Shown one piece after another: positions 13,083 through 49,754 of a stretch of DNA of 64,000 nt. The translations under genes and the position numbers were made by a program. This stretch comes from Macrostomum lignano (Eukaryota). Where the stretch lies: positions 62,001 through 126,000 of the forward strand of contig NIVC01000282.1 of NCBI GenBank assembly GCA_002269645.1, read 5' to 3'. Position 1 is the stretch's first letter. The number at the start of each line of letters is the position of its first letter. The notes beneath the pieces were generated by a model. That model saw nothing but the letters and a program-made list of their open reading frames with translations. It was not told the DNA's origin and did no database searches.

Positions 13083-16000
13083 TCAGACCGGCGGCAGCAG
13101 CAGCATCTCAGCCTCCATCATCGAGTAGGAGAAGCCAAACGGATTATACCAGACGATTCCGGAAGCGTCCAGGCTGCGAAATGTGTCAGCTGAGTAGTTG
13201 AAGTACTGCCCGTTTAAGTGGGCATTGTGGCAGCAGCCGAACCACCAGGCGCCGATGTAGCGCGTGGCGCAGTTGGCACCGTCACCGCAGGCGCAGTTGT
13301 TGACGTCCCGCGTGCTGAACGGCTTGCTCCTGTGGATGTACATGGAGTCGTCCAGGTTGCCAGAGTAGCCGGTCCAGTCAATTCTGTATTTGTCAGCCTC
13401 AGGCCCGACCCTGAATGAGCGGAGTTCGGCCCAGAACACGGTGGCGTTCCACAGGGTGAGCTCGATGCGGAGGGTTCGAGAGCCCGGCTGGCCGGTAGTG
13501 AGCTGGTGCATCGCGTCCAGGCCTGGGGCAGAGAGTCAGTTTTTTAGCTGAGCACTTTGAGCACTGCGTCTGCCTGAGCACTGAGCGTCTGCCTGAGCAC
13601 TGCGTCTGCCTGAGCACTGAGCGTCTGCCTGAGCACTGCGTCTGCCTGAGCACTGAGCGTCTGCCTGAGCACTGCATCTGCCTGAGCACTCCAATTGTTG
13701 GAGCACTCTGTCTACCTGAGAACTCAATCTACCTGAGAAATCAATCTACCTGAGAACTCAATCTACCTGAGAACTCAATCTACCTGAGAACTCAATCTAC
13801 CTGAGAACTCAATCTACCTGAGAACTCAATCTACCTGACAAAACTCAATCTACCTGAGAACTCAATCTACCTGAGAACTCAATCTACCTGAGAACTCAAT
13901 CTACCTGAGAACTCAATCTACCTGAGAACTCAATCTACCTGAGAACTCAATCTACCTGACAAAACTCAATCTACCTGAGAACTCGATCTACCTGAGAACT
14001 CAATCTACCTGAGAACTCAATCTACCTGAGAACTCAATCTACCTGACAAAACTCAATCTACCTGAGAACTCAATCTACCTGAGAACTCAATCTACCTGAA
14101 CAATCCGTGACAAAATGAAAAGCGTCACACCTACAGACACTCAAAGATACTAGTCTTGCTCTTTACAATCACAGCGCCCAGGTGTCCGAGCACTCACCGA
14201 GCCAGAAGTTGCAGTTCTCGCCAGTCCCAAAGCCGGCCTTATAGTCGGCCCAGGTGCGGTAGAAACTCACCGAATCGGACACTCGATGCTGAATGGTCTT
14301 CCAGCACTTGGCCAGGTGGCTGCTTCGAATCTGCGTTCGTTCAGTTTTGTCATTGTTCTTTTCCGAGAAAGAATCAACAATGCAAGCTGCATTTCTATTG
14401 CAGATTCTTTAGATTTTTTGGCAGACTGGTTGTTAGTAGAGTACCAGAGACTGAATTACGAGCTAATAATTAGCTACAGCCTGAGAGCTTGAGAGAGGCA
14501 TTGCTGCTGGCCATTCCGCCGACTCCCCTGAGCAGGCAAACAAGCGCGCGGATACGTACGCAGTCATACGCACAGGCACACACTCACACAGGAGTGTACA
14601 GCGGCCCCTGACTTTATTTATCGTTAGGCTGTACACTTCACTGTGCCTTGGGGGTTGGCCATCAAAGGCGTTAATTGCACGAGCAGAGCCAAGCCGAGGG
14701 TCCAATTTAGCCCCAAATCAATGTGACTGCACTTGGAATCGAGCCTGGGCCGCTGGCACATCAGAGCTAGCACTACGCTACGGCCCCTGGTGTTCAATGA
14801 GGTTTCAATTATTAAATTATTTCTCTTTTATTCTTTCCAACACGCACAGTAATTATGAAATTAATTAACAGTTTTATTCACACAGGTTTTTTATTTGCCA
14901 CTAACTGTCTTTACCCGTGTGGATAAGTTACATACACATGCGCCATTGTTGGCCGTAAAGTCGTTCTAAATGCTAATGTATATTGACATTCCATTAGTTC
15001 TGTTTGCAGACCATGCAGATGGCCCATTGCGTTTAACTTGGCTCTGGAAAATAACAATTGACACAAACGCACTCTGGGGGCAGGATAAACCTGATTATCA
15101 ATGTTTAACAGCCGGTCAATTTTATTTGATGAGCGCCACACATCAAATAAATTGGCTTTTAGTGCCACACAAATTTTATTTTGATGCTGGGTGCCTGACG
15201 ATCAAAATCAATAAATAATAGAGGCTCCATCCTGGCTTACTGCAAGTACTGTGGCAGCGTTGGGTATTGATATTTAGTGACTGGCACTAATCTGTTAGAC
15301 ACAGGCACTAATCTGTTAGACACGGGCAGCTGTGTTAGACACAGGCACTAATCTGTTAGACACGAGCACTAATCTGTTAGACACAGGCACTAATCTGTTA
15401 GACACGAGCACTAATCTGTTAGACACGAGCACTAATCTGTTAGACACAGGCACCAATCTGTTAGACACGAGCACTAATCTGTTAGACACAGGCACTAATC
15501 TGTTAGACACGAGCACCAATCTGTTAGACACGAGCACTAACCTGTTAGACACGAGCACTAATCTGTTAGACACGGACACTAAACTGTTAGACACGGGCAC
15601 TAATCTGTTAGACACGGACACTAAACTGTTAGACACGGGCACTAATCTGTTAGACACGGGCACTAAACTGTTAGACACGGGCACTAATCTGTTAGACACG
15701 GGCACTAACCTGTTAGACACGAGCACTAACCTATTAGACACGGGCACTAAACTGTTAGACACGAGCACTAATCTGTTAGACACGGGCACTAATCTGTTAG
15801 ACACGGGCACTAATCTGTTAGACACGGGCACTAAATTGTTAGACACGGCACTAATCTGTTAGACACGGGCACTAACCTGTTAGACACGGGAACTAAACTG
15901 TAGACACGGGCACTAAACTGTTAGACACGGGCACTAACCTGTTAGACACGGGAACTAAACTGTAGACACGGGCACTAAACTGTTAGACACAGGCACTAAC

Positions 16001-26400: not shown

Positions 26401-29400
26401 AGCGGTCCCTTTTTCAAACCGGCTGGCTTGGGGTGTCGGCCAGTCAAATACTCAACTCGCGTAACGAGTAGCCCTACCCCGCTTTTCAGCTATGGCCACT
26501 AACGCCACCATCCCAAAAGAAACTGACCCGGTCGCCTTTGGCCCACCGGGATCAGCCGCTCCGGTAGCTACCACTGGTAGCACCAACGCCCAACCTGGTC
26601 CAACCGGGCCAGATGACGCTGCCGCCGAGCACCCTGGCCGCCAGTCTAGCCGACCGCGCACGGCCGAGTCCCGATGGCAGCGAAACATCCGCCGCAACCG
26701 TAAGCGGCAGGAGAAGCGGGCTGCTGCTGCGTCCGCGGAGGGCGGGCAAGCCGCGGTGAGGCCTTCGGGAGCCACCGCAGCGGGGAGGCCCTCTGGGGAG
26801 TCCGGCGGTGCGGCTGGGCCGTCAGGAACCGCCGTGTCCTCGGACTCTCAGGGGGACAACCCTGCCGGCCTACCGCTCTCCAAGGACAAAGCGGCCCCGC
26901 TCAAGACCTCCGAGTCCTACGTCTCCAAGGTCAAGCAGCCGCTGCAACCCGCCGTGATGATCCTCGGCGGGGACTTCGACCTGACGCCCGAGCAGCTCGA
27001 CGTCGCGTGGCGTACCATCGACGAGGGCTTGCTCAACCTAACCCTGGAGGGCGTCTTTGTGGACATCGTCAAGTCCACCAAGGCGAACGGGTGCATCCTA
27101 CTGTGGTGCAAATCCGAGGAAAGCACCTAGCTCCTGCGGGATCAGCTGCCCAAGTTCGACTGGCACGGCGACCTGGGCCAGCTGACCTTCGCCCTGGAGA
27201 GCGAGCGGCCGAAGACCATCCGCCATCGGATTTGGGTCCCGGCCGACAGTGCGATCAAGTCCGGGGAGCAGCTGCGGCAGCTCCTGCTCAAGCGGCACCC
27301 GGATCTCGACGCCAGTGGTCCTGTGTACCACAGCACGGTCCTCAAGGGCACGACCGGGGCCACCGTCATCCTCGGCCTGACGGAGGGATGGTCCAAGCTG
27401 CTACCGCACGGCACAAACCTCCACCTTGGTCTCCACCAACTGACCATCCTCCGCTGTGAGGAGGGCAAGGTGGAGACCAAGAACGACGGGAAGCGCGCCG
27501 CTCCCGGAGCTGGCGCTTAGGCTCCGCCGGCCAAACAGCAGCAGCAACCCGATCCCGAGCCTAACAAGGCTATTCGCGCTGCTGAGTCCGCCTCGCGTGG
27601 ACGTAGACCCGCCCGCAGTAACCGACAGTCCGGGCTAATCCAGCGCGCACTTGACGAAGCTCAGTCTCTGAGACTTCACCTCGAGCAGACTCGTGCCGCT
27701 CGCAAAAACACTGAAAGCCAGCCGAGGGAAATGGACGACGGCATGGCTCAGCCTTCCAACTGGTGGGATTACCACTAGGACGCTGCCGGCCGAGCTCAGA
27801 CTCCCGACGGCGGGGCGCAAGGCGAAGGCAGCAGCCGTACCCCAGTCGCTGGGGAGGAGGGCGGTGTAGCGCGGCTAGGTGACTCACCTGCCGTGGGCGC
27901 CGTGTCCGTCTCCGCGGCGGCTGGGGAGGCGGCTGAGCCTGAGCCAATGGAAATTGGCGACTCAACTCTCACCGATGAGGCTGAGAATGAGTTGCTTTTC
28001 TCCTCCCCTGGACAGTAGACATGACCGTCTCCCAGGGCATCCACTGCTTGCAGGTCAACCTGCAGCACAGCATTGCTGCTTCGGTCAACCTCTTGAAGCA
28101 CACTGACCAATACGCACCAGGGATTATCCTTATCCAGGAACCTTGGATGCTAAGGGGCAGCCCCCAACATGTCCCCACCGGCTACCAGTGTTTAACCGCT
28201 GGCAACCGGGAGGGAAACCTGGCACCAAGATCTTGCATCATGGTGTCTAGCTCTATTAACGCATGGCTCAGATCGGACCTGTCTACCAGGGACATCTGTG
28301 TCATCCAGTCTGAAGACATACTCCCTAGGAGGACTACTCTCATCGCCTCGGTCTACCTCACCGGGCGACGGCGAGATGATCCCAGGAGAGCTTTTCACAC
28401 TGGTCGAGCTCTGCTCCACCAGGAATTATGAGCTGCTTGTGGCAGGTGATATCAACGCCCACCACACCCACTGGGGCAGTTCTGATATTAACCAGAGAGG
28501 TGAAGAATTCCTGGCTTATATCACTACTACAACCCTTGAGTTCTGTAACTCGGGTAGTACCCCTACCTTCAATAACGGACGCCGATCGGAGGTGCTGGAT
28601 GCCACCCTCGCCACGCCCAGGCTCTTTCAGAGCACTAGGGAGTGGCGGGTGCTTCCTGAGGCGTCCCTCTCCGATCACAAGTTCATCTACTTCACGCTGG
28701 CCAGCGCCCGAAACGCAGGCCAGCTTTACTGGAAACGGAATGCTAGGAATACCGACTGGACCGCCTTCAGGCTTGCCCTGGAGGAAGCAGATGAATTTGC
28801 GGCCGCACTTACGGACTCGCTCACTGCTGCCTTCGAAGCCTCATGCCCACTAAAGGCATATAAAGGCAAACAGTCGGCCCCATGGTGGAACCCGCAGCTT
28901 GGCGACCTCCGTCGCAGAGCCAAAAGGCTTCACCGTAGGGCCCAAAAAAACTAAAAACCCGGCCGACCAAACCGCCTACCTGAACTCTATCCACGAGTTC
29001 AAGAGGCAGGTTAGGAACGCCAAAACCAACAAGTGGCGCGAATACTGTGAGGAACTTGAGGGCTCCCGCCCCACCTACAGAATCGTTAAAGCCCTCACCC
29101 TGGACAAAATGTCCAAACTCTCCTCAGTCAAGAGAGCCGACAGCTCGCTCACTGAGAACCCAGGAGAAACACTGGAAGCGATGCTAACAGCGTTTTTCCC
29201 GAACGAGCCAGCCAGGCCCGACCCCCCTGATCACTCAGTGGGCGGTCACGTACTGGCTGACTCAATCATCACGGAGGACCGCGTTACTAAAGCAGTCTCC
29301 TCCTTCAAACCCTTCAAATCCCCAGGATCGGACGGCGTTGTGCCAGCCTTCCTGCGAGAGGCGGTGAAATGCACCGGTTTCCTGCGGAACCTTTGCCGGC

Positions 29401-32400
29401 TTCTGAAAGCTTGCATTGCTCTCGGCTTTGTTCTGAAACCCTGGACCGAGGCTAAGGTGGTTTTTATCCCCAAGCCCGGCCGTCACTGGAACAGGTCATG
29501 GTTGCTTTGCCAGGCACTGTTTCCTCCGAAGTGCCCGCCGGAGCGAACTCTGCCCTTTCTGCAACCTCGAGAACGAAGACGCCAAGCACTTCGTCTGCTA
29601 CTGCCCGGCCTTCAACCGAGACCGGCTCAACCACCTCGGGCCCAACCCGTCCCTGGACGACGTTTGCCGGCCGAGAACATCCCACGGCTCATCCGGTTCC
29701 TCCGGGCCACCAAGCGAGCCTCCGTCTTCCCCACCGAAGACAACGCTGCAGACAGGACCGGCAGACCTCCCTGACCGGCCCCGCGCCCTAGCCTATGCGG
29801 GTCTTTCAGGGATTAGCGGAATGGGCGACGCTCGCCTCCCCGCTGCGTCTTCGGACCGCCCTGCAGCTAAGTCAAGTAAGTCAAGTCTGGGAGTCCAGCA
29901 CCCAGGACACGATGGAGGCACATTACGAGTTCTGCATTCACCGGCTATCGACGAAAATTGCAGAGACTGCGGACACTGCGGTCAGCCTGAACGACCTACG
30001 CACCGGCTGGCAGGTAGGCTTCCAGTGGGCGGCTAAAGACGCGGGCAGGCGTTTCAACAGCTCGTCCGGGACGCTGCGCTCTAGACTGAGTCTACTCCGC
30101 ATCGACCTGAGGTACCGGATCTGAACGACAATACCGGTAAGTCAATCGGTTCTTTTGCCAATTTTTAAGAGTCGAATGCCCTAACGGGGAGGATTGATGT
30201 GACTCTGGTTACTGAACTTATTCCGGCTACGGAGGGATTGCAACTGGAAGACAGGAACAACGTCCAGATTGACCCAGCCGATTTCAAATCCCCAGAGCAC
30301 CTGGCCACCAGCCACGCTCCACCTAGATAAAACTCTTCTGGTTGGTGCAGTTTCAACGAAGAGCCGAGCATGCTCAGTCAGGTCGAAAGGATAAACGGTA
30401 CCTCTGCGGTCCGGACGCTTCTCGAAGTGCAGAGCACTTAATAGCAGAGTCCAGCTGCCTGTGCTCAGGATTCGGACACGGGGGTGGTCTGCGACCAGAC
30501 ATCCCCACCTGTGAACCGAACTAGACACAGCTCAGCTGACCAGGGTAGTACCACCTCACCACCTCAGTTCGTTACACCTTAAGAGCAAGACGCTTAAGTG
30601 CAGGGTCGAGTTGCCTGTGCCCAGGAGCTCGACACGGGAGTGGTCTGTGCTCAGACACCTCCACCCGCAGCTGTAGTGGTTGGCGCTGGATGCCACAACT
30701 CGCCACAGCAGACTCCCACTGTCAACGTCCACGGGGGACTCAAAAAGGACTGGAGACTCTCCATCACCGAGAAGCAGACTATAGTAATCGGTGACGAGAA
30801 GCTGGCGCGACCTGGGATCGAACAGCTTGACTTCCAGTTTGAAATCTTCCCGAACCTTAGGGCAGAAAATTTGGTCAAAATGTTACGTGAACAGGTAGCA
30901 TCACCGAGTTCGAAGATCAAGGACGTTATTCTATTCCCTATCTATCTATCTATCTATCTGTCGATTCCTCTGTGTCAGACTAAAATAATTAAGTCCATAC
31001 AATAATTTTGTACACCGATCACTCTGAGCACATACTTGCCACACACTACGTACACTACCAAAACAGTCCATCAAAATCCGCAGCAATATTAGCACAAGCT
31101 ATTAAAGCCAATGCACTCACCCGGCTCTGGTACAATCAGGCCGCCCCAACCTCTTGCAGGCTTTTTATTCTGACTGGACGGCCGCTGCGCCTCAGTTAGA
31201 AATGCCTCATTAGTGCGGCTCAGGTAGAGGCACCACATGCGGAACAGGCCGGAGCGGAACTGAGAAGCCGGAGCAGCGCCCAGCTGAATAAGTGCGTCCG
31301 CCTGGCTGCTCAGGATCACCTGGGTTTTTAACCAATTTAAGCCATTTAAATCCTGTGATTAAAGTACATAAGGCTACCTGAGATAACCCCGATGAGGCTA
31401 CCTGAGATAATCCCAATGAGGCTACCTGAGATAATCCCGATGAGGCTACCTGAGATAATCCCGATGAGGCTACCTGAGATAATCCCGATGAGGCTACCTG
31501 AGATAATCCCGATGAGGCTACCTGAGATAATTCCGATGAGGCTACCTGAGATAACCCCGATGAGGCTACCTGAGATAATCCCGATGAGGCTACCTGAGAT
31601 AACCCCAATGAGGCTACCTGAGATAATCCCGATGAGGCTACCTGAGATAATCCCGATGAGGCTACCTGAGATAATCCCGATGAGGCTACCTGAGATAATC
31701 CCGATGAGGCTACCTGAGATAATCCCGATGAGGCTACCTGAGATAATCCCGATGAGGCTACCTGAGATAATCCCGATGAGGCTACCTGAGATAATCCCGA
31801 TGAGGCTACCTGAGATAATCCCGATGAGGCTACCTGAGATAATCCCGATGAGGCTACCTGAGATAATCCCGATGAGGCTACCTGAGATAATCCCGATGAG
31901 GCTACCTGAGATAATCCCGATGAGGCTACCTGAGATAATCCCGATGAGGCTACCTGAGATAATCCCGATGAGGCTACCTGAGATAATCCCGATGAGGCTA
32001 CCTGAGATAATCCCGATGAGGCTACCTGAGATAATCCCGATGAGGCTACCTGAGATAATCCCGATGAGGCTACCTGAGATAATCCCGATGAGGCTACCTG
32101 AGATAACCCCGATGAGGCTACCTGAGATAATCCCGATGAGGCTACCTGAGATAATCCCAATGAGGCTACCTGAGATAATTCCGATGAGGCTACCTGAGAT
32201 AATCCCGATGAGGCTACCTGAGATAATCCCGATGAGGCTACCTGAGATAATCCCGATGAGGCTACCTGAGATAATCCCGATGAGGCTACCTGAGATAATC
32301 CCGATGAGGCTACGTGAGGCAGTTTGAGTTACAGAGAATCCCAATAAGATGATCCCAATCTCCAAGCCAGCTCCAAGCCGCAAAGCCAGTAGCTACCGTC

Positions 32401-35031: not shown

Positions 35032-38000
35032 TTAAGTAATGTACGCCACTAGGCTAGCCAACACGACACCGTGACAGCGGAGACAGGCCCCTGACAGCTC
35101 TAAGCAGCGCTCGCACGAGACAAAATGTGCGCACGGAAGCGACACTCGATTCCGAGTTCTCATCCGGCATCGAGAGCATTTTTCATCGTCGACATTGGTG
35201 TCGTCAGTTGCATCTGGGCCGGATGGCGCCGCGGCAGCTGCGGCAGCGGTAGCAACAATAGCAGCACCAGAGCCCATTGGTGTAACTGACACAACTGACT
35301 GTTGAACCAGCTGATTACTACTAATAGGAGGCTGATCAACTAAAGCCAAATCTATTAAACCGAGAATGTCGAACTCGCTATAGTAGTAAAATTGTTCCAT
35401 ATTTTGAGCCAAGGCTATGATATCGCCAGCTCGGAGACTGGGCAAAGCGCCATCACTGTCTGGGCCAATCAGTTTGATAGAGTAGAGGTGGCGGGCTATG
35501 CTCAAACAAAGAAGATTCGTCTGAAATTTGAATATTTTAAGCAGCTGCCTATTGGCGACTTTTACACAAACTTTTGCTCATAGACTTTTAGAAGTCGATC
35601 AGGCACCGGCACCATCGGCACCGGCACCGGCACCGGCACCGGCACCATCTCAGTGAGACTCTCTGCTTCGGTCATTAACCAGCTGAGTCACTCTCTGCCT
35701 CGGTCATTAACCAGCTGAGTCACTCTCTGCCTCGGTCATTAACCAGCTGAGTCACTCTCTGCCTCGGTCATTAACCAGCTGAGTCACTCTCTGCCTCGGT
35801 CATTAACCAGCTGAGTCACTCTCTGCCTCGGTCATTAACCAGCTGAATCACTCTCTGCCTCGGTCATTAACCATCAGTCAGACTCTCTGCATCGGTCATT
35901 AACCATCAGTCAGACTCTCTGCATCGGTCATTAACCATCAGTCAGACTCTCTTGCATCGGTCATTAACCATCAGTCAGACTCTGCATCGGTCATTAACCA
36001 GCTGAGTCACTCTCTGCCTCGGTCATTAACCAGCTGAGTCACTCTCTGCCTCGGTCATTAACCAGCTGAGTCACTCTCTGCCTCGGTCATTAACCAGCTG
36101 AGTCACTCTCTGCCTCGGTCATTAACCAGCTGAATCACTCTCTGCCTCGGTCATTAACCAGCTGAGTCACTCTCTGCCTCGGTCATTAACCATCAGTCAG
36201 ACTCTCTGCCTCGGTCATTAACCATCAGTCAGACTCTCTGCATCGGTCATTAACCATCAGTCAGACTCTCTGCATCGGTCATTAACCAGCTGAGTCAGAC
36301 TCTCTGCATCGGTCATTAACCAGCTGAGTCACTCTCTGCATCGGTCATTAACCATCAGTCAGACTCTCTGCATCGGTCATTAACCATCAGTCAGACTCTC
36401 TGCATCGGTCATTAACCATCAGTCAGACTCTCTGCATCGGTCATTAACCATCAGTCAGACTCTCTGCATCGGTCATTAACCATCAGTCAGACTCTCTGCA
36501 TCCGTCATTAACCAGCTGAGTCAGACTCTCTGCATCGGTCATTAACCATCAGTCAGACTCTCTGCATCGGTCATTAACCATCAGAGTCAGACTCTGCATC
36601 CGTCATTAACCACAGAGTCAGACTCTGTTTTAATGCCGCTCACAGCTCACCGAGTAGCCATAGCTGGAAGCCAGCTGCACGGGCAAGAGTTCCAAAGCCA
36701 ATCTCAATTTTCTCATGTCGCCAGCTATCCGTCTGGCTTGAGCAGCAATTCCAGCTGGATCAGCAACTTGTATACTCAGTAGACTCACTACAGAACAATG
36801 AGTACCCTTGGACAATGCTGATTCTGTATGCAACCGCAGCACAGCTTCATAGTCGGCATCAAACCACGGCTGTATCTGACAGATGCAGCTGCAAAAACAG
36901 CATCGTACAGTTCCGATACCGCTAGACGAGTCCATAGCAACCAGATAGAAACCATTAGCCGACCAAACATCGATAACAGATTGATTTTCTGCGCCTGTAT
37001 CAGGCAAAGCTGACACAAATGTGGCTCGGCGATTGGTGAACAAAAGCCGATTGAGCTCGGTGGGAGCGATGAGCAGCCAAAGAAGATGGCCTGAGATGAG
37101 AGGATTGAGGAGTTCGAGTTTGAAAAGCAGATATTGTTTTATATTTCTTTTAATGGAGTGATTTGTACTTTGTAGCTAGCTGGGGTGGATAGCTGGGGGT
37201 GGCTAGCTGGAGGTGGCTGGCTAGCTGGAGGTGGCTGGCTAGCTGGGGGGTGGCTACATGGGGTGGCTACATGGGGTGGCTAGCTGGGGGTGGCTACATG
37301 GGGTGGCTAGCTGGGGGTGGCTAGCTGGGGGGTGGCTAGCTGGGGGTGGCTACATGGGGTGGCTAGCTGGGGGGTGGCTGCATGGGGTGGCTAGCTGGGG
37401 GTGGCTAGATGGGGTGGCTAGCTAGGGGGTCGCTAGATGGGGTGGCTAGCTAGGGGGTGGCTAGATGGGGTGGCTAGCTAGGGGGTGGCTACATGGGGTG
37501 GCTAGCTGGGGGGTGGCTACATGGGGTGGCTAGCTGGGGGTGGCTAGCTGGGGGGTGGCTACATGGGGTGGCTAGCTGGGGGGTGGCTGCATGGGGTGGC
37601 TAGCTGGGGGTGGCTAGATGGGGTGGCTAGCTAGGGGGTCGCTAGATGGGGTGGCTAGCTAGGGGGTGGCTAGATGGGGTGGCTAGCTGGGGGGGTGGCT
37701 TGCTGGGGGTGGCTAGATGGGGGTGGCTAGATAGGGTGGCTAGCTAGGGGGTGGCTAGATGGGGCTGGCTAGCTGGGAGTGGCTAGCTGGGGGGTGGCTA
37801 GTTGGGGCTGGCTAGCTGGTAGTGGCTAGCTGGGGGGGGTGGCTAGTTGGGGCTGGCTAGCTGGGAGTGGCTAGCTCGGGGGGTGGCTAGTTGAGGCTGG
37901 CTAGCTGGGAGTGGCTAGCTGGGGGGGGGTGGCTAGTTGGGGCTGGCTAGCTGGGGGGGGTGGCTAGTTGGGGCTGGCTAGCTGAGAGTGGCTAGCTGAG

Positions 38001-38729: not shown

Positions 38730-40290
38730 TGGGAAGCTTAGGGATTGGAATGCTTGAGGATGGGATTGGGAAGATTAGGGATTGGAATGCCTGGGATGGG
38801 ACTGGGAAGCTTAGGAATTGGAATGCTTGAGGATGGGATTGGGAAGATTAGGGATTGGAATGCCTGGGATGGGACTGGGAAGATTAGGGATTGGAATGCC
38901 TGGGATGGGACTGGGAAGATTAGGGATTGGAATGCCTGGGATGGGACTGGGAAGATTAGGGATTGGAATGCCTGGGATGGGACTGGGAAGATTAGGGATT
39001 GGAATGCTTGAGAATGGGACTGGGAAGATTAGGGATTGGAATGCCTGGGATGGGACTGGGAAGATTAGGGATTGGAATGCCTGGGATGGGACTGGGAAGA
39101 TTAGGGATTGGAATGCCTGGGCATGGGACTGGGAAGATTAGAGATTGGAATGCCTGGGCATGGGACTGGGAAGCTTAGGGATTGGAATGCCTGAGGATGG
39201 GACTGGGAAGCTTAGGGATTGGAATGCCTGGGCATGGGATTGGGAAGATTAGGGATTGGAATGCCTGGGATGGGACTGGGAAGATTAGGGATTGGAATGC
39301 CTGGGATGGGACTGGGAAGATTAGGGATTGGAATGCCTGGGATGGGACTGGGAAGATTAGGGATTGGAATGCCTGTGATGGGACTGGGAAGATTAGGGAT
39401 TGGAATGCCTGGGATGGGACTGGGAAGATTAGGGATTGGAATGCCTGGGATGGGACTGGGAAGATTAGGGATTGGAATGCCTGGGATGGGACTGGGAAGA
39501 TTAGGGATTGGAATGGTTGAGAATGGGACTCGGAAGATTATGGGCTGGAATGCTTGAGGATGGGACTGGGAAGATCAGGGACTGGAATGCTTCAGGATGG
39601 GACTGGGAAGATTAGAGATTGGAATGCCTGGGATGGGACTGGGAAGATTAGAGATTGGAATGCCTGGGATGGGACTGGGAAGATTAGGGACTGGAATGCT
39701 TCAGGATGGGACTGGGAAGATTAGGGATTGGAATGCCTGGGATGGGACTGGGAAGATTAGGGATTGGAATGCCTGGGATGGGACTGGGAAGATTAGGGAT
39801 TGGAATGCCTGGGATGGGACTGGGAAGATTAGGGATTGGAATGCCTGGGATGGGACTGGGAAGATTAGGGATTGGAATGCCTGGGATGGGACTGGGAAGA
39901 TTAGGGATTGGAATGCCTGGGCATGGGACTGGGAAGATTAGGGATTGGAATGCCTGGGCATGGGACTGGGAAGATTAGGGATTGGAATGCCTGGGGATGG
40001 GTCAGGGAAGCTTAGGGATTGGAATGCCTGAGGATGGGACTGGGAAGATTAGGGATTGGAATGCCTGGGGATGGGTCAGGGAAGCTTAGGGATTGGAATG
40101 CCTGAGGATGGGTCAGGGAAGCTTAGGGATTGGAATGCCTGAGGATGGGACTGGGAAGTTTAGGGATTGGAATACCTGGGGATGGGTCAGGGAAGCTTAG
40201 GGATTGGAATACCTGGGAATGGGTCAGGGAAGCTTAGGGACTGGAATACCTGGGGATGGGTCAGGGAAGCTTAGGGACTGGAATGCCTGG
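38730..40290. repeat. 36/37-bp tandem gggattggaatgcctgggatgggactgggaagatta
   Basis: Direct reading. Confidence 0.95.
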
Positions 40291-40500
40291 GGAATAAAGA
40301 GTTTGTCAATAACGCGGACCCTGGCTTAATCTGCTTAACAGTTAAAAGACAGCAAAATTAAAACTTAAATCAACCAAACTTAGATTAACAAAACAACACA
40401 ATTGCGACCATTTGTATATTAACATAGCGACAGCAAATCAATGAATAAATAAAATCTAGATAGAATGTCAATAGGATCTCTCGAAGCATACAGCAGCAAC

Positions 40501-42095
40501 CTACAGTGCGGCACTTCTAGAAAGCCTTGCAGACCACAGGTAGAACGGCAGGCCGACCACAGCCGCCAGTACTGCCACTCCTGCGGTGAACAGGCTGCGC
40601 GAAATCCACTGCGCTCGGCTTGCTAGAAGTCTTTTGTACAGCCGAACCGCCTGATCCCTGCTGTGCGCCTCGCTGTGCTGGTTGTCAATCACCACAGTAG
40701 CCTTGGTTACCTTCGAGTCCAATGGCAGCTGGGCTGCGATGCGCTGCTTGGCCTGGCGGTGGAGGAGAGAGCGTGAACTAATTACCACTTTTTTATTAAC
40801 CCTGCAGAGATTGACATTAGTTGCCTCTCCGCTCCCTATCAGTACTTAAGAATCTGCCTCTGTTCTCCATAAGTGCTTGAGAATCTGCCTCTCTTCTCCA
40901 TCAGTGCTTGAGATTCTGCCTCTCCGCTCCCCATCAGTGCTTGAGAATCTGCCTCTCCGCTCTCCCCATCAGTGCTTGAGAATCTGCATCTCCGCTCTCC
41001 ATCAGTGCTTGAGAATCTGCCTCTCTTCTCCATCAGTGCTTGAGAATCTGCCTCTCTTCTCCATCAGTGCTTGAGAATGCTTGAGTGCTTGAGAATCTGC
41101 CTCTCTTCTCCATCAGTGTTTGAGATTCTGCCTCTCCGCTCTCAATCAGTGCTTGAGAATCTGCCTCTCTTCTCCATCAGTGCTTGAGAATCTGCCTCTC
41201 TTCTCCATCAGTGCTTGAGATTCTGCCTCTCCGCTCTCCATCAGTGCTTGAGAATCTGCCTCTCCGCTCTCCCCATCAGTGCTTGAGAATCTGCCTCTCC
41301 GCTCTCCATCAGTGCTTGAGAATCTGCCTCTCTTCTCCATCAGTGCTTGAGAATCTGCCTCCTTCTCCATCAGTGCTTGAGATTCTGCCTCTCCGCTCTC
41401 CATCAGTGCTTGAGAATCTGCCTCTCCGCTCTCCATCAGTGCTTGAGAATCTGCCTCTCCGCTCTCCATCAGTGCTTGAGAATCTGCCTCTCTTCTCCAT
41501 CAGTGCTTGAGAATCTGCCTCTCTTCTCCATCAGTGCTTGAGAATCTGCCTCTCCGCTCTCCATCAGTGTTTGAGAATCTGCCTTTCTTTTAGCTTCCGC
41601 AATTCAGCGATTAACTGCACCCACCTGTTCCACGGTCAGCTGAGCATTTCGCTTCATCAGTCTCTCCAGCTGCTGCTCGGGGCGGCAGTAAACAACGACA
41701 ACTTCGGTCAGCCAGGGGAGCATGCCGGCGCCAGACTTCTCAAACAGCAGCGGCAATTCCAGCACAACAAATTGCTCCAGCATAAAGAAATGATAAATCA
41801 ACTGGTAGGCAATCTCTCTGTAAACAGTAGGATGCACGATCGCATTCAATTTGGCCCGCTTGCCAGCGTCGGCAAACACGATGGCGCCGAGTCGGTCCCT
41901 GTCAATCTCGTCAGAGTCTGGCAGCAGCACGCCTGGCCCGAATTCTCGCACAACCTGGGCCCAGGCTGGCTGGCGCGGCTCCAGCGCCGACTTGGCCACC
42001 GAATCGGCGTCGATCACCAGCACGCCCATTCGGCGCAGCTGGTCCGCCACCGTTGACTTGCCCGACGCGATGCCACCGGTTAGACCGACCAGGTA
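40501..42095 (-). CDS. DCAKD: dephospho-CoA kinase domain-containing protein
   Basis: Exons 42095-41625 and 40752-40501. P-loop VGLTGGIASGKST, IDAD, LNAIVHP, PLLFE, QLERLMKRN, RIAAQLPL, C-terminal TM helix. Start codon unresolved (see findings). Confidence 0.93.
40820..41580. repeat. 31/33-bp tandem cagtgcttgagaatctgcctctccgctctccat (DCAKD intron)
   Basis: Direct reading. Confidence 0.95.
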
Positions 42096-42159
42096 CTGAA
42101 GGCGAGGGGGTGGTGGGGCTTGAGGTGCAGTGGAATTTGACGGGGTTATTGATTTGGGG

Positions 42160-43220
42160 GTGGTGTAGTTTGAGAGGTGGTGGGTTTTGAGGTGGTGGGG
42201 TTTGGGGTGGTGGGGTTTGGGGTGGTGCATTTGAAGGTTGGAGTTTGGGATGGTGGGAGTTGAGGGGTGGTGGGAGTTGAGGGTTGGTGGGAGTTGAGGG
42301 GTGGTGGGAGTTGAGGGGTGGTGGGAGTTGAGGGTCGGTGGGGTTTGAGGGGTGGTGGGAGTTGAGGGTTGGTGGGAGTTGAGGGGTGGTGGGATTTGAG
42401 GGGTGGTGGGAGTTGAGGGGTGGTGGGAGTTGAGGGGTGGTGGGAGTTGAGGGGTGGTGGGAGTTGAGGGGTGGTGGGAGTTGAGGGGTGGTGGGATTTG
42501 AGGGGTGGTGGGAGTTGAGGGTCGGTGGGGTTTGAGGGGTGGTGGGAGTTGAGGGGTGGTGGGAGTTGAGGGGTGGTGGGAGTTGAGGGGTGGTGGGATT
42601 TGAGGGGTGGTGGGAGTTGAGGGGTGGTGGGAGTTGAGGGAGGTGGGAGTTGAGGGGTGGTGGGAGTTGAGGGTCGGTGGGTTTGAGGGGTGGTGGGAGT
42701 TGAGGGTTGGTGGGAGTTGAGGGGTGGTGGGAGTTGAGGGGTGGTGGGATTTGAGGGGTGGTGGGAGTTGAGGGGTGGTGGGAGTTGAGGGGTGGTGGGA
42801 GTTAGGGGTGGTGGGATTTGAGGGGTGGTGGGAGTTGAGGGTCGGTGGGGTTTGAGGGGTGGTGGGAGTTGAGGGTTGGTGGGAGTTGAGGGGTGGTGGG
42901 AGTTGAGGGTTGGTGGGAGTTGAGGGGTGGTGGGAGTTGAGGGGTGGTGGGAGTTGAGGGGTGGTGGGAGTTGAGGGGTGGTGGGAGTTGAGGGGTGGTG
43001 GGAGTTGAGGGTTGGTGGGAGTTGAGGGGTGGTGGGAGTTGAGGGGTGGTGGGAGTTGAGGGGTGGTGGGAGTTGAGGGGTGGTGGGGTTTGAGGGGTGG
43101 TGGGAGTTGAGGGTTGGTGGGAGTTGAGGGGTGGTGGGAATTGAGGGGTGGTGGGAGTTGAGGGGTGGTGGGAGTTGAGGGTTGGTGGGAGTTGAGGGGT
43201 GGTGGGAGTTGAGGGATGGT
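42160..43220. repeat. 18-bp G-rich tandem gtggtgggagttgagggg
   Basis: Direct reading. Confidence 0.95.
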
Positions 43221-43759
43221 GGGGTCGTTGTAAGTATTGTGTTGGGTTTCTTAATTCTAAATATAAGAGCATTATGTCTAACTAGACTTTAGTAGATGTT
43301 GATTTTTATCTCAGTTTTTGGTAGGGTTTGAAGGGCGTCAGACATTAAAGGAAGGATTTTTTAAACATGTATGAAAATATCAATAAATACAATGGAAAGC
43401 AACAAAAAATAACTTGTTTAAAAGCAAGTTTGTTTTATCGCACAAAATCACTTTGAAATACAACTATTAAATGCGCGCAAAAGGCCTTATACATTGCGCA
43501 AACTATTGCATACAACTTGATAAGAACAGAGAAATGACGCAAAAGCCAATTATGGCAACAAAAGCAAAACTTTACCAACGTCTAAAGTTTGAAATTTAAA
43601 TACAAACAATTTTTACGATTCTACATGTATGAACTAGAAAACTAGAACTGAAGTTCAATAAAAATTCTGTGCGTAGGACTAAAACAAGTGCAAAGTATTC
43701 AGGTATAGGTTAAATGGCAAGTTAAACAATTGATAATTACACGAAGTTTTCTTTAATAC

Positions 43760-44530
43760 CCATCTGCTGACAGACACCTGACCCCATCAGCTAATAGAGA
43801 CATCTGACCCCATCAGCTGACACAGACATCTGACCCCATCAGCTGACAGACATCTGACAGACATCTGACCCCATCAGCTGACAGAAATCTAACCTCATCA
43901 GCTGATTCTGATACAGACATCTGACCCCATCAGCTGACAGACATCTGACCCCATCAGCTGACAGACATCTGACCCCATCAGCTGACAGAAATCTAACCCC
44001 ATCAGCTGATAAAGACATCTGACCCCATCAGCTGACAGACATCTGACCCCATCAGCTGACACAAAACTGACCCATCAGCTGACAGACATCTGACCCCATC
44101 AGCTGACAGAAATCTAACCCCATCAGCTGATAAAGACATCTGACCCCATCAGCTGACAGACATCTGACCCCATCAGCTGACAGACATCTGACCCCATCAG
44201 CTGACAGACATCTGACCCCATCAGCTGACAGAAATCTAACCCCATCAGCTGATAAAGACATCTGACCCCATCAGCTGACAGACATCTGAACCCATCAGCT
44301 GACACAAAACTGACCCATCAGCTGACAGACATCTGACCCCATCAGCTGACAGAAATCTAACCCCATCAGCTGATAAAGACATCTGACCCCATCAGCTGAC
44401 AGACATCTGACCCCATCAGCTGACAGACATCTGACCCCATCAGCTGACACAAAACTGACCCATCAGCTGACAGACATCTGACCCCATTAGCTGACACAAA
44501 ACTGACCCATAAGCTGACAGACAGCTGACC
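43760..44530. repeat. 24-bp tandem gacatctgaccccatcagctgaca
   Basis: Direct reading; abuts the TEN1 stop codon. Confidence 0.95.
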
Positions 44531-44533
44531 ACA

Positions 44534-44989
44534 TCAACTGAAAGGCAGCAATCCCATCAACTTGTATGCAGCAGTCGCAGCCTTCCTGTACATCTCTGGC
44601 TCAACAGAGCTCATATCACGAAACGTATATGCCTTTAGCGTCCAAGACACTGGGCCTGGCGTCTGACTCTCGTAGCAATTCAACAGTTCACCAATAATTT
44701 CAATGCGCTGATGCATTGGCGGCGGAGTGTCCACATCAAGTAGTGACAGGTCGACATGTATTGTGTTCTGATTAGCAGAGGCTGCAGTCAGGGATGATTG
44801 GCAAGTCTCATCGCGCAGTATAGAAATGCAGCTCTCAGCATTCAGGCTGACCAGTCTGCCCAATGTTCGAATGTGACAAGGCGATGCAGACTGGCGCTGC
44901 TGCTGCTGATGACACAGTTGAGGCATCAGGGGGCTGGAGCCATTAATCAGCTCACTGATAATTAGATAGGTGCAGCTATTATTTGTAGC
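44534..44989 (-). CDS. TEN1: CST complex subunit TEN1-like OB-fold protein
   Basis: One coding block after acceptor tttgcag. TYLIISEL, IRTLGRL, IIGEL and LKAY.FR..EPEMYRKAA parallel TEN1 motifs (TYYLPWEV, LRTFGRL, IVLGEL, VKARV). Confidence 0.65.
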   Translation of the reverse strand, partial: ATNNSCTYLIISELINGSSPLMPQLCHQQQQRQSASPCHIRTLGRLVSLNAESCISILRDETCQSSLTAASANQNTIHVDLSLLDVDTPPPMHQRIEIIGELLNCYESQTPGPVSWTLKAYTFRDMSSVEPEMYRKAATAAYKLMGLLPFS

Positions 44990-46559
44990 CTGCAAATGAT
45001 AGCAGCCTTTATGACATTATATAGGCCTACTGTAACATTTTATTGAAAGAACTTTTGCCATAGTTTTATTTCTAACCAAAACAGGATTTTGCTAGTTTTT
45101 TTATATTTGATAGTCAAATTAAAAGCCAAAGTTATATAAGAAGACAGAGAATTATTTAATGAAATGAAAATAACTTACTAATACTTTGTATATGCATCAA
45201 TTATATAAATAGTTGTCCAAAATTCTAAAATTCTAGCAAATATTAAGGACTATTTAAAAAAATATAAATTAGTCTTTAGTCTAAGATAACTATATCAGCT
45301 TTCATTTCAGACTGATTTCAACCAAATTTATTGTATAGTTCCAGCCACATAATGTCTAAGAAAAGGCAGATTGAATTCTTGTATGAACTAGAAACAATAA
45401 TTAGGCCTATTAAGAAATTGCCAAACTTTTTGGGGCTCAAAAGTGACATTGTCTAAAAAGTACAAAAACTCCTATAACTCAGCCCCAAAGCACATAGCAT
45501 CCATAGTTTGGAAGGTGACATATATGCCAAGATTTCCTAACATACAACAAGGGTAGGCTTACTTGCCTTTTTTCAGCATATATCAGTATTCATCCTAGCA
45601 TAGATACATTTTTGTCCCAGCATAAAAATGAGAACCTTTTTATTATTCTCCCACTAGACTTAATTTACACTAATACACAATCTGAGCTATTATACACAAT
45701 ATTGTCATTAAATTGGTATAGTACTGTGGGAATAAGCACTGCCTACTATTTTTTAACATTATTTCTAAATCTTAGGCCTAGCATTTAAATATCTGGTTTA
45801 TTATTTAGTTTAATAAGTTTAATAACTAACTTATAACTAACTAACTAACTAACTAATTATAACTAACTAATTATAACTAACTTATAATAACTAACTTATT
45901 AAATCTATAGTTTAATAACTAATAGATTTAATAATATTTTAGGACATGTAAGAGTTATTTGGCATAGGAAATAAGTTGAAATTTAGCTTTCATTTGACAC
46001 AATGACACATCTAATATGCTTATTAGGTTCATTAATAATAACTAATTGGAGATGCAGTCAATTATGATTAGATTATTATGATTATTATGTTATTATATTA
46101 TGATTAATGGAGTCATGGACCTGACCTCTTTTATCAATTTAAGCAGCATCCTTGCAGACCTTGCTCATGATCATAAATGCTGCATTCCTATACATACAAT
46201 GCATTGCTTGGGTGCGCGTGCGCGGTCATTTCGTATGCCGTCTTTTCGTCTGCCGGCAGACGAAACGACTTTCTAAAAGACTTGATAATAAAACTGCACT
46301 GCTCCCAAATAAATTTTATGAATTTAAAATAGTTTTTTCCTAGATTTTTATTAGAAACCCTTAACTAGTACTGATTTAATTTTATTTCAAAAACATTCAA
46401 CTAAGAGTTTTATACGTGTTGAAAAAAGACAGCTAGATTAATTGTTTAGTAAAAGTTATCTAAATTTTAGTTTAATTTGTAAATTTTCCTAGAAACCATT
46501 TTTTTTTCGCTGCGGCATCGAATTAATTCAACTCTACTCTCTTCATAGGGGTAAGGACA

Positions 46560-48397: not shown

Positions 48398-49754
48398 TTA
48401 TTTTGCCTGTCTAGAATGTCGTGAGAATGTGTCAGTCAAGCAAGAAAGCAGCAAGCTAATGATATGGCACACATAAAATTTCAATAATAGACTTATAGAT
48501 GTCTATGGTGAAAATTCTTGTTATTCTAGCAGCAAAATTGGGGGCAGGGGCGAGCTCAGCATAAAGTGCTCAATAACTAATGCAACGCGGTGATCAAGCT
48601 TGAAAAATTTAATAGCGAGTTTGTCAAAATGGAAGATTTCCAGGCTTATGCCTACGCTAGATACCGTCTTGGAATCTCTGCTATTAGTTGTTATGACGAA
48701 CTACTTAAAGTTTATGGAGATGCCGCACAAGGTCAGTCAATGGTTTACAGATGGTACTCAAAGTTCCGTGATGAAGCATTTCCCCTGGCCTCAGCTCCTT
48801 GGACTGGCCAGCCACAGTCAACAAGGACAACGGAACTGATCGAAACCTGCCAAGCTCTTGTTGAAGAGGATTCAAAAGTTAGTGTCCAAGACCTTGCCGA
48901 CTTTTTGGAAGTTGGTAAAACAACAGTGCACAAAATTTTGATTGAGGATTTGCACCTTCAAAACGTTTCTGCCGTCTGGGTTCCTCATGCTCTATCCAAG
49001 GAGAACAAGACTGTTCGCATCAATTGTGCCAAGTAAATCTGCAGGCTTTTTTACAACGAGGGGGTGGAAAACTTTTGCAACAAGCATGTGGTGGAAGATG
49101 AGATGTGGGTGTACCTGAACAATGGCACAAAGCAAAACAACAGGTGCTGGCTTAGCCAATAGGGATCATCGGCCCCAGGTTGTCAGGCACTCAGTCGGGA
49201 ATGCAAAGACAATGCTTCTGGTTGCTTTCACTCCAAGCAAGCGCTTCTCCATTAAATCCACAGCCCCGAAGCAAACTGTTGATGCAGATGGCATAGTTGA
49301 ATTCATTTGGCACACGGGAGACCTATGGCGTACTCTAAGGTCAAAGCCAATTCACCTGTCAGATGTTCTTTGGCAGTGGGACAATGCGCGACCTCATGTA
49401 GCCCGTTCTGTGCAGCAGTACATTGGAGTCCCGTGGAGTTCAGCTGGTGTTTCAGAGTCCTTACAGCCCAGACTTCAATCTGTGCGACCATTTTTTGTTC
49501 AGTTGGATGAAGAATGATTTCTCCAGGCGAGTATTCAGCGACCACAATGAAGTTCGAGAAGCTGCGTTGCAGTGGACAAGAGGCCTTGACAAAGATTGCT
49601 TAAAAAGAGAGGTTCAGCGACTCGTTGACCATTGCCAAGCTGTAATCAATGCAAGGGGAGATTACATTACCAACTAGTGCTGTTATCGTGTTTTTTGATA
49701 GTTCTGACTGATTTTTTAAATACATTCTCGCAACTTTCTGGACAGCCAAAGTAG
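48398..49754 (+). mobile_element. mariner (Tc1/mariner) transposon, decayed
   Basis: TA flanks; 33-bp TIRs 48398-48430 and 49722-49754 (26/33 identical). Transposase motifs WVPHAL, EDE, WDNARPH, SPYSPDFNLCD, with stops and frameshifts. Confidence 0.92.

What the first reader, a model, noticed from the sequence alone, without database searches (positions are those of the whole stretch)
42085..42120. DCAKD lacks its canonical ATG; the spliced leader may supply the initiator AUG
Seen: on the minus strand, a pyrimidine tract and acceptor (ccaccaccccctcgccttcag) sits exactly before TAC CTG GTC GGT (YLVGLTGG) in phase 0. By eye I found no ATG|GT donor between here and the TEN1 stop at 44534. The only in-frame ATG (42230) lies in the decayed end of an 18-bp array and would add 45 low-complexity residues. 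Known: DCAKD homologues begin M-[FY]-L-V-G-L-T-G-G, and flatworm spliced leaders end in AUG, shown to act as initiator in Schistosoma mansoni. Inference: trans-splicing adds the Met and recreates the canonical N-terminus exactly, so the gene would depend on SL addition.
Basis: partly seen in the sequence, partly recalled or inferred. Interest (0 to 1): 0.8.

Follow-up and report, generated by a model that had tools for sequence, protein, structure and literature searches.

The report
Start codon supplied by spliced leader
A conserved kinase-like gene (DCAKD) of the flatworm Macrostomum lignano has no start codon in the genome and almost certainly gets its AUG from the trans-spliced leader RNA, a mechanism already shown in schistosomes, so this is a clean new example and not a new phenomenon.

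Summary
On the minus strand, ...ccctcgcCTTCAG|TACCTGGTC puts a splice acceptor (AG at 42097-42096) exactly in front of codon 2 of a dephospho-CoA-kinase-domain protein (exon 1 42095-41625, exon 2 40752-40501). The only in-frame genomic ATG (42230) lies in a C-rich tandem array whose period is 17 nt, not 18. The window is Macrostomum lignano, whose single 35-nt spliced leader ends ...TTGCATG. The acceptor matches the published trans-splice motif [T/C]TNCAG. The deposited protein models (one tagged Mlig005497g2, flagged "partial") start at this same Tyr. Three diverged genomic copies keep the acceptor and an indel-free 240-codon ORF under purifying selection (dN/dS 0.06-0.14). The upstream ATG falls in frame 0, 1 and 2 in the three copies, and one copy has no in-frame upstream ATG at all. 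No consensus ATG-bearing cis exon lies within 5 kb upstream. The spliced-leader AUG would give MYLVGLTGG, matching homologues (MF[LI][VI]GLTGG). I saw no spliced-leader reads, so trans-splicing at this site rests on indirect evidence. The mechanism is known (Cheng et al. 2006, Schistosoma mansoni), so this is a new member of a known kind and of modest interest. A TEN1-like ORF just upstream may use the same trick.

The parts
42096..42120 (-). End of the outron: a C-rich pyrimidine tract and the trans-splice acceptor CTTCAG (AG at 42097-42096).
   Evidence: Sequence. It matches the M. lignano trans-splice motif [T/C]TNCAG. CCTTCAG|TACCTGG is identical in the three gene copies. It is one of only two YTNCAG sites in the 2.4 kb upstream interval.
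41625..42095 (-). DCAKD exon 1: 471 nt, codons 2-158 of the mature protein, starting at Tyr and holding the P-loop GLTGGIASGKST. Donor is CAG|GTGGGT at 41624.
   Evidence: Pfam CoaE match at 2.5e-52 covers residues 2-185. Solved CoaE structures align from residue 2.
40753..41624 (-). Phase-0 intron of 872 nt, almost filled by a 33-nt tandem array (40822-41584).
   Evidence: Intron length differs between copies (872, 1084 and 1135 nt).
40501..40752 (-). DCAKD exon 2: 83 codons plus the TAG stop (40503-40501), including a hydrophobic C-terminal tail.
   Evidence: It is identical to deposited protein P0121 and to the C-terminus of P0001.
42228..42230 (-). The only in-frame genomic ATG upstream. 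It is not conserved in frame and is probably outron sequence removed by trans-splicing.
   Evidence: Frame 0 in the window (135 nt upstream), frame 1 in L001 (136 nt), frame 2 in L002 (116 nt).
42157..43223 (-). Tandem array of 17-nt units (63.6 copies), C-rich on the coding strand, forming most of the outron or intergenic spacer.
   Evidence: GC skew is 0.61 on the + strand for 42001-44000.
43224..43758 (-). Unique AT-rich spacer with the only poly(A)-signal-like hexamer (ATTAAA, first base at 43757). It is possibly the 3' end of the upstream gene.
   Evidence: Function is inferred, not shown.
43759..44541 (-). Tandem array of 24-nt units (32.5 copies) directly after the upstream ORF's stop codon.
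44534..44995 (-). TEN1-like ORF. Acceptor TTGCAG ends at 44990, coding runs 44989-44537, and the stop is at 44536-44534. It is a likely upstream partner in the same transcription unit and a possible second gene that uses the spliced-leader AUG.
   Evidence: The ORF and acceptor are conserved in L001 at 98% amino-acid identity. TEN1 identity is weak (22.2 bits, below the Pfam cut-off).

Best explanation
The gene is the Macrostomum lignano orthologue of DCAKD, a dephospho-CoA-kinase-domain protein of the CoaE family. Its genomic coding sequence starts at codon 2. The pre-mRNA is probably the downstream part of a transcription unit that also carries the TEN1-like ORF. It is trans-spliced at the acceptor CTTCAG| (42097-42096) to the 35-nt spliced leader, whose last three bases are AUG. 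The junction ...UUGCAUG|UACCUGGUC puts that AUG in phase 0 directly before Tyr. Translation then yields MYLVGLTGGIASGKST..., the canonical N-terminus one beta-strand ahead of the P-loop. Everything upstream, including the 17-nt array and the ATG at 42230, is outron and is discarded. Production of a full-length protein with its P-loop therefore depends on leader addition.

What is shown here:
- the anatomy of the site;
- the leader sequence, taken from the literature;
- the fit to the acceptor motif;
- conservation of the coding-sequence boundary across three copies;
- the deposited gene models starting at this residue.

What is inferred: that leader-joined reads exist at this exact site, that ribosomes start at the leader AUG, and that the gene sits in an operon with the TEN1-like ORF.
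For: 1. Organism and leader. The translated gene is 100% identical to a UniRef M. lignano protein. The M. lignano leader is CGGTCTCTTACTGCGAAGACTCAATTTATTGCATG, and about 30% of genes are trans-spliced to it.

2. Acceptor. The site is CTTCAG, and the published trans-splice acceptor motif is [T/C]TNCAG.

3. Deposited models. P0001 (A0A1I8GAZ8) and P0122 (PAA84875.1, 'BOX15_Mlig005497g2, partial') are both 240 aa and start YLVGLTGG. In copy L001 the CDS begins at base 10001, the first base after the AG. Three of the other four deposited CDSs in the fetched loci start with ATG. The annotation pipeline (TBONE) cuts transcription units at peaks of leader-containing reads after trimming the leader, and then runs TransDecoder. 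The frame stays open for 84 codons upstream in L001 and includes an ATG, so a model that extended upstream would not have started at the AG.

4. Three copies (window, L001, L002). All keep the acceptor and an indel-free 240-codon ORF, with dN/dS of 0.06-0.14. The upstream 135 nt carry indels that shift the frame between copies, net shifts of 1 nt (L001) and 19 nt (L002). The homologous ATG therefore sits in frames 0, 1 and 2. L002 has 105 open codons upstream with no ATG.

5. No phase-0 ATG...GT[AG]AG exon candidate lies within 5 kb upstream.

6. Homologues begin MF[LI][VI]GLTGG. CoaE structures and the Pfam profile align from residue 2. The next in-frame Met (codon at 42029-42027) lies after the P-loop.

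7. Use of the leader AUG as initiator is established in S. mansoni, where more than 40 cDNAs need it. All flatworm leaders end in AUG. The Macrostomum leader ATG has been called a translation start codon.
Against: - I saw no leader-containing read, cDNA or peptide for this gene.
- The exact protein MYLVGL...AAL is not in the 15-billion-protein collection.
- No supplement held as text lists Mlig005497.
- A CDS that starts at an acceptor could also arise if the transcript assembly simply broke in the repeat array. The 83-aa exon-2-only model on L002 shows that such breaks or internal cuts do occur.
- The window copy and L001 each have an in-frame upstream ATG, at non-homologous positions, that could be used on any untrans-spliced RNA.
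Confidence: 0.85

Rival explanations
1. Translation starts at the genomic ATG at 42230 on an RNA that is not trans-spliced at 42096. This would give DCAKD a 45-residue His/Pro-rich N-terminal extension.
For: The ATG is in frame, with no stop before the exon. L001 also has an in-frame upstream ATG, at 9830.
Against: The two ATGs are not homologous. The 42230 homologue is out of frame in L001 and L002, and L002 has no in-frame upstream ATG at all, although its ORF is under equally strong purifying selection. No deposited protein carries the extension. Homologues have no extension. The ATG lies in a 17-nt array.
Confidence: 0.05
2. A conventional cis-spliced 5' exon further upstream ends in ATG, or carries an ATG in phase 0, and is joined to this acceptor.
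For: Acceptors can be shared between cis- and trans-splicing in flatworms. Six weak ATG...GT[AG] candidates lie between the upstream stop and the acceptor.
Against: None of the candidates within 5 kb has the M. lignano donor consensus GT[G/A]AG. Most of the interval is tandem repeats plus another ORF. The deposited models end at the acceptor and are flagged partial instead of continuing into an upstream exon.
Confidence: 0.05
3. Initiation occurs at the first internal AUG (Met codon at 42029-42027) or at a non-AUG codon. Alternatively, the locus is a decaying pseudogene copy and the missing ATG is simply damage.
For: There is no genomic ATG at the canonical place. M. lignano carries many redundant gene copies.
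Against: Starting at the internal Met would remove the P-loop GLTGGIASGKST. All three copies lack the ATG in the same way, yet keep intact ORFs with dN/dS of 0.06-0.14 and no indels. The in-frame codons just upstream (CCC CCT CGC CTT CAG) are not near-cognate starts.
Confidence: 0.04

Closest known systems
[quoted passage not shown]
   Same: The leader ends in AUG. The acceptor is in phase 0 directly before a conserved codon 2. No usable genomic start codon exists. The leader AUG restores the conserved initiator Met position.
   Different: The species is a different, early-branching and free-living flatworm (Macrostomorpha), and the gene is DCAKD. There is no experimental proof of translation here. 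The dependence is shared by three diverged genomic copies.
Spliced-leader trans-splicing and operons of M. lignano (Wudarski et al. 2017, PMC5730564; Ustyantsev & Berezikov 2021, PMC8629364)
   Same: The acceptor fits the motif [T/C]TNCAG. The locus tag Mlig005497g2 marks the second gene of a transcription unit. The stop-to-acceptor distance is 2437 nt, about 600 nt once tandem repeats are subtracted, which is under their 1-kb operon threshold. Repeats inflate the spacer, as they describe.
   Different: In the text I searched, those papers do not discuss genes that lack their own start codon. Trans-splicing of the upstream TEN1-like ORF is unverified, so operon status is an inference.
DCAKD / CoaE (dephospho-CoA kinase, Pfam PF01121)
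   Same: Full-length CoaE domain, P-loop, 42-49% identity to the listed animal DCAKDs, and a hydrophobic C-terminal tail like theirs.
   Different: The initiator Met is not encoded in the gene.

Membership tests
Genes whose initiator AUG is supplied by the flatworm spliced leader | The organism has a spliced-leader RNA whose leader exon ends in AUG. | tested here: met
   The window is M. lignano. The published 35-nt leader ends ...TTGCATG, and the ATG is noted as conserved in the genus. No leader gene lies in the window itself.
Genes whose initiator AUG is supplied by the flatworm spliced leader | A trans-splice acceptor sits at the 5' end of the coding exon. | tested here: met
   CTTCAG| fits [T/C]TNCAG and is conserved in three copies. 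In copy L001 the deposited CDS starts at the first base after the AG.
Genes whose initiator AUG is supplied by the flatworm spliced leader | Leader-containing transcripts are actually joined at this site. | not testable with these tools
   No reads or cDNAs were reachable. Support is indirect only: the model Mlig005497g2, flagged partial, comes from a pipeline that cuts at leader-read peaks.
Genes whose initiator AUG is supplied by the flatworm spliced leader | The leader AUG is in frame with the ORF and reproduces the conserved N-terminus. | tested here: met
   The junction is phase 0 and gives MYLVGLTGG, against MF[LI][VI]GLTGG in homologues.
Genes whose initiator AUG is supplied by the flatworm spliced leader | No conserved genomic in-frame AUG can serve instead. 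| tested here: met
   The upstream ATG is in frames 0, 1 and 2 in the three copies, and L002 has none in frame. The next internal Met lies after the P-loop.
Genes whose initiator AUG is supplied by the flatworm spliced leader | Translation from the leader AUG is demonstrated. | not testable with these tools
   This needs proteomics, ribosome profiling or a reporter.
DCAKD / CoaE (PF01121) | A CoaE domain above the Pfam gathering score, with the P-loop GxxxxGK[ST]. | tested here: met
   177.6 bits against a cut-off of 27. The P-loop is GGIASGKS. PDB CoaE hits reach 2e-28. The listed animal DCAKDs are 42-49% identical.
M. lignano operon (Ustyantsev & Berezikov criterion) | Neighbouring genes on the same strand, both trans-spliced, with a repeat-adjusted intergenic distance under 1 kb. 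| tested here: inconclusive
   The strand is the same. The distance is 2437 nt, of which about 1840 nt is tandem array. Trans-splicing of the TEN1-like ORF is only suggested by an in-phase TTGCAG acceptor. Copy L002 lacks that ORF.

The most novel reading that the evidence does not exclude
Obligate dependence on the spliced-leader AUG may be an evolutionarily stable and common gene architecture in this early-branching flatworm. All three diverged DCAKD copies, and probably the TEN1-like gene immediately upstream, have no start codon of their own. If so, many '5'-partial' proteins in the M. lignano annotation would in fact be complete, and such genes would be what keeps the AUG at the 3' end of every flatworm spliced leader under selection.
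Probability: 0.55. Interest if true: 0.4.

Novelty: new member of a known kind. Interest (0 to 1): 0.25.

Why it matters
The finding has three practical consequences.

1. It fixes an annotation problem. PAA84875.1 and A0A1I8GAZ8 are probably complete proteins that lack only the Met contributed by the spliced leader. Other 'partial' M. lignano models that start at YTNCAG acceptors probably need the same correction.

2. It gives a clean test case with three copies for the idea that genes lacking their own AUG are what hold the leader's terminal AUG constant across Platyhelminthes. The test is feasible because M. lignano can be made transgenic.

3. It means expression of this protein is gated by trans-splicing.

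It does not reveal a new mechanism.

Tried and rejected
- **Direct transcript evidence.** An exact look-up of MYLVGL...AAL found nothing in the protein collection. The homology search returned no RNA-seq-derived Macrostomum proteins.
- **Published lists.** I searched the literature and supplements for Mlig005497 or DCAKD and found nothing. Cheng et al. 2006 is not held.
- **Leader gene in the window.** None was found.
[quoted passage not shown] Support is too weak and orthology is unchecked, so I kept it only as a lead.
- **TEN1 identity.** The ORF has no homologue in the protein database and no PDB hit by sequence. The single-sequence AlphaFold model had pLDDT 43.9 and was unusable, so I ran no fold search.
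- **Pseudogene reading.** Considered and rejected because of dN/dS.
- **Upstream cis exon.** Considered and rejected after the donor scan.
- **Collection scans.** I did not scan the metagenome, viral or prokaryotic collections for the leader-exon junction, because they cannot hold flatworm transcripts.

Full report
**What is in the sequence.** On the minus strand the window reads ...agccccaccaccccctcgccttcag|TACCTGGTCGGTCTAACCGGTGGC. The AG is at 42097-42096 and the first coding base is 42095. The exon translates to YLVGLTGGIASGKSTVADQL... and runs for 471 nt to 41625, where the donor is CAG|GTGGGT. An 872-nt phase-0 intron follows, nearly filled by a 33-nt tandem array. Exon 2 (40752-40501) ends in TAG. 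With a Met added, the 241-aa product is a full-length CoaE/dephospho-CoA-kinase domain. Pfam PF01121 scores 177.6 bits over residues 2-185. PDB CoaE hits reach 2e-28 and align from residue 2. The product is 42-49% identical to the listed animal DCAKD proteins, which all begin MF[LI][VI]GLTGG.

- From 43300 down to the acceptor, the minus strand has only two ATGs: 43272 (frame 1) and 42230 (frame 0). The second adds 45 low-complexity codons.
- A scan of 5 kb upstream found no ATG followed in phase 0 by a GT[AG]AG donor, the consensus reported for this species. Only six weak GT[AG] candidates lie between the upstream stop and the acceptor.
- The upstream ORF stops at 44536-44534.
- Two small corrections apply. 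The C-rich array (42157-43223) has a 17-nt period, not 18. The 'TEN1' label rests on a sub-threshold Pfam hit of 22.2 bits against a cut-off of 27.

**Whose genome it is.** The protein is 100% identical to a UniRef entry from Macrostomum lignano. This species has one known spliced leader, CGGTCTCTTACTGCGAAGACTCAATTTATTGCATG. About 30% of genes are trans-spliced to it, and the top motif at trans-splice acceptors is [T/C]TNCAG. The acceptor here is CTTCAG. On this strand, YTNCAG occurs only twice in the 2.4 kb between the upstream stop and the exon.

**What existing annotation implies.**
- The two full-length deposited M. lignano proteins both start at this same Tyr. They are A0A1I8GAZ8 (P0001) and PAA84875.1 (P0122, 'BOX15_Mlig005497g2, partial').
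- On the Mlig_3_7 contig NIVC01000356.1 (L001), the CDS begins at the first base after the AG. Three of the other four deposited CDSs in the fetched loci begin with ATG.
- That annotation was made by trimming the leader from reads, mapping them, cutting transcription units at the resulting peaks (TBONE) and then running TransDecoder.
- The frame is open for 84 codons upstream in L001 and contains an ATG. A model that extended even slightly upstream would therefore not have begun at the AG.
- The suffix g2 marks the second gene cut out of transcription unit Mlig005497.
- This is indirect but experiment-derived support for a trans-splice site here. I could not see the reads themselves.

**Comparative test.** The window, L001 and L002 (NIVC01003016.1) are three diverged copies.
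- All three keep CCTTCAG|TACCTGGTC and an indel-free 240-codon ORF. Synonymous divergence (pS) is 0.06-0.09, non-synonymous divergence (pN) is 0.006-0.009, and dN/dS is 0.06-0.14.
- The constraint stops at the acceptor. The 135 nt upstream carry indels that shift the frame between copies, net shifts of 1 nt in L001 and 19 nt in L002.
- As a result, the ATG homologous to 42230 lies 135, 136 and 116 nt upstream, in frames 0, 1 and 2.
- L001 has a private in-frame ATG elsewhere, at 9830.
- L002 has 105 open codons upstream with no ATG at all.
- An upstream genomic start therefore cannot be the shared mechanism, and the pseudogene reading is excluded.

**Mechanism.** The most likely account (about 0.85) is as follows.
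1. The leader is trans-spliced at 42096/42095.
2. Its terminal AUG sits in phase 0 directly before Tyr.
3. Translation from it gives MYLVGLTGG..., the canonical start one strand ahead of the P-loop.
4. The 17-nt array, including ATG 42230, is outron and is discarded.

The next in-frame Met (42029-42027) lies after the P-loop, so a functional protein needs the leader AUG.

The gene probably lies downstream of the TEN1-like ORF in one transcription unit. The spacer from stop to acceptor is 2437 nt, but about 1840 nt of it is tandem array. That leaves roughly 600 nt, which is under the repeat-adjusted 1-kb operon threshold used for this species. This last point is an inference.

**Comparison with what is known.** Use of the flatworm leader's 3'-terminal AUG as initiator was shown in S. 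mansoni by Cheng et al. 2006. [quoted passage not shown] The Macrostomum genome paper of 2023 already calls the leader's final ATG a translation start codon. This case meets every sequence-level criterion of that class. Two criteria, leader reads at the site and translation from the leader AUG, cannot be tested with these tools. It is a new member of a known kind, a tidy instance conserved in three copies in an early-branching free-living flatworm.

**Things that led nowhere.**
- The exact MYLVGL... protein is not in the large protein collection.
- No held supplement lists the gene.
- Cheng 2006 is not held.
- The TEN1-like ORF has no database homologue or PDB match, and its single-sequence structure model was unusable.
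[quoted passage not shown] This is a lead only.

Noticed in passing
window 44534-44995, minus strand: The TEN1-like ORF upstream also lacks a start codon where one is expected. An acceptor, atcatTTGCAG|GCTACAAAT, ends at 44990. It matches YTNCAG and is in phase 0, so the spliced-leader AUG would give MATNNSCTYLIISEL.... The first genomic in-frame ATG is 23 codons further in. The ORF and acceptor are conserved in L001 at 98% amino-acid identity, but no CDS is deposited for it. TEN1 identity is weak (Pfam Ten1_2, 22.2 bits, below cut-off).
   Followed up: partly
L002:6800-6815, compared with window 45530-44540: The third gene copy (NIVC01003016.1) has lost about 1 kb, including the whole TEN1-like ORF. 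The sequence ttaggaaatcttg joins directly onto the 24-nt array. DCAKD there is intact and under constraint but has no TEN1-like neighbour.
   Followed up: partly
L002:10001-10252: On this copy only exon 2 is deposited as a CDS (83 aa, P0121), starting right at the exon-2 acceptor ...cccactag|GCCAAG. The intron is phase 0, so a leader joined there would also be in frame (MAKQRIAAQ...). This could be an internal trans-splice site, or a transcript model broken by the intronic 33-nt array.
   Followed up: no
window 42096-42230, compared with L001 and L002: The 135 nt before the acceptor show fewer substitutions between copies than synonymous sites of the CDS. There is 1 substitution against L001 and 3 against L002, versus pS of 0.06-0.09. 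The same stretch nevertheless carries frame-breaking indels. Possible causes are constraint on outron splicing signals, gene conversion, or a composition effect.
   Followed up: partly
window 38730-40291, 40822-41584, 42157-43223, 43759-44541: Four long tandem arrays, with periods of 36, 33, 17 and 24 nt, fill the 3' flank, the intron and the spacer of this small gene. Their lengths differ between copies. The 17-nt array is extremely C-rich on the coding strand, forming a kilobase-scale pyrimidine-rich outron.
   Followed up: partly
window 28021-29774 (+) and 48590-49517 (+): Mobile-element remnants are present. One is an endonuclease-reverse-transcriptase ORF (Pfam Exo_endo_phos_2, 1.6e-20), apparently split over several frames. 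The other is a Mos1/mariner-like HTH_48 transposase fragment.
   Followed up: partly
window 7731-11365 (+), 13083-13511 (-), 35032-35505 (-): Other gene fragments were seen. They are sodium:solute symporter exons interrupted by a long tandem array, a fibrinogen C-terminal domain exon (1.1e-26), and a RING zf-C3HC4_3 exon. The RING exon probably belongs to the gene downstream of DCAKD, whose paralogues have an ordinary ATG.
   Followed up: no
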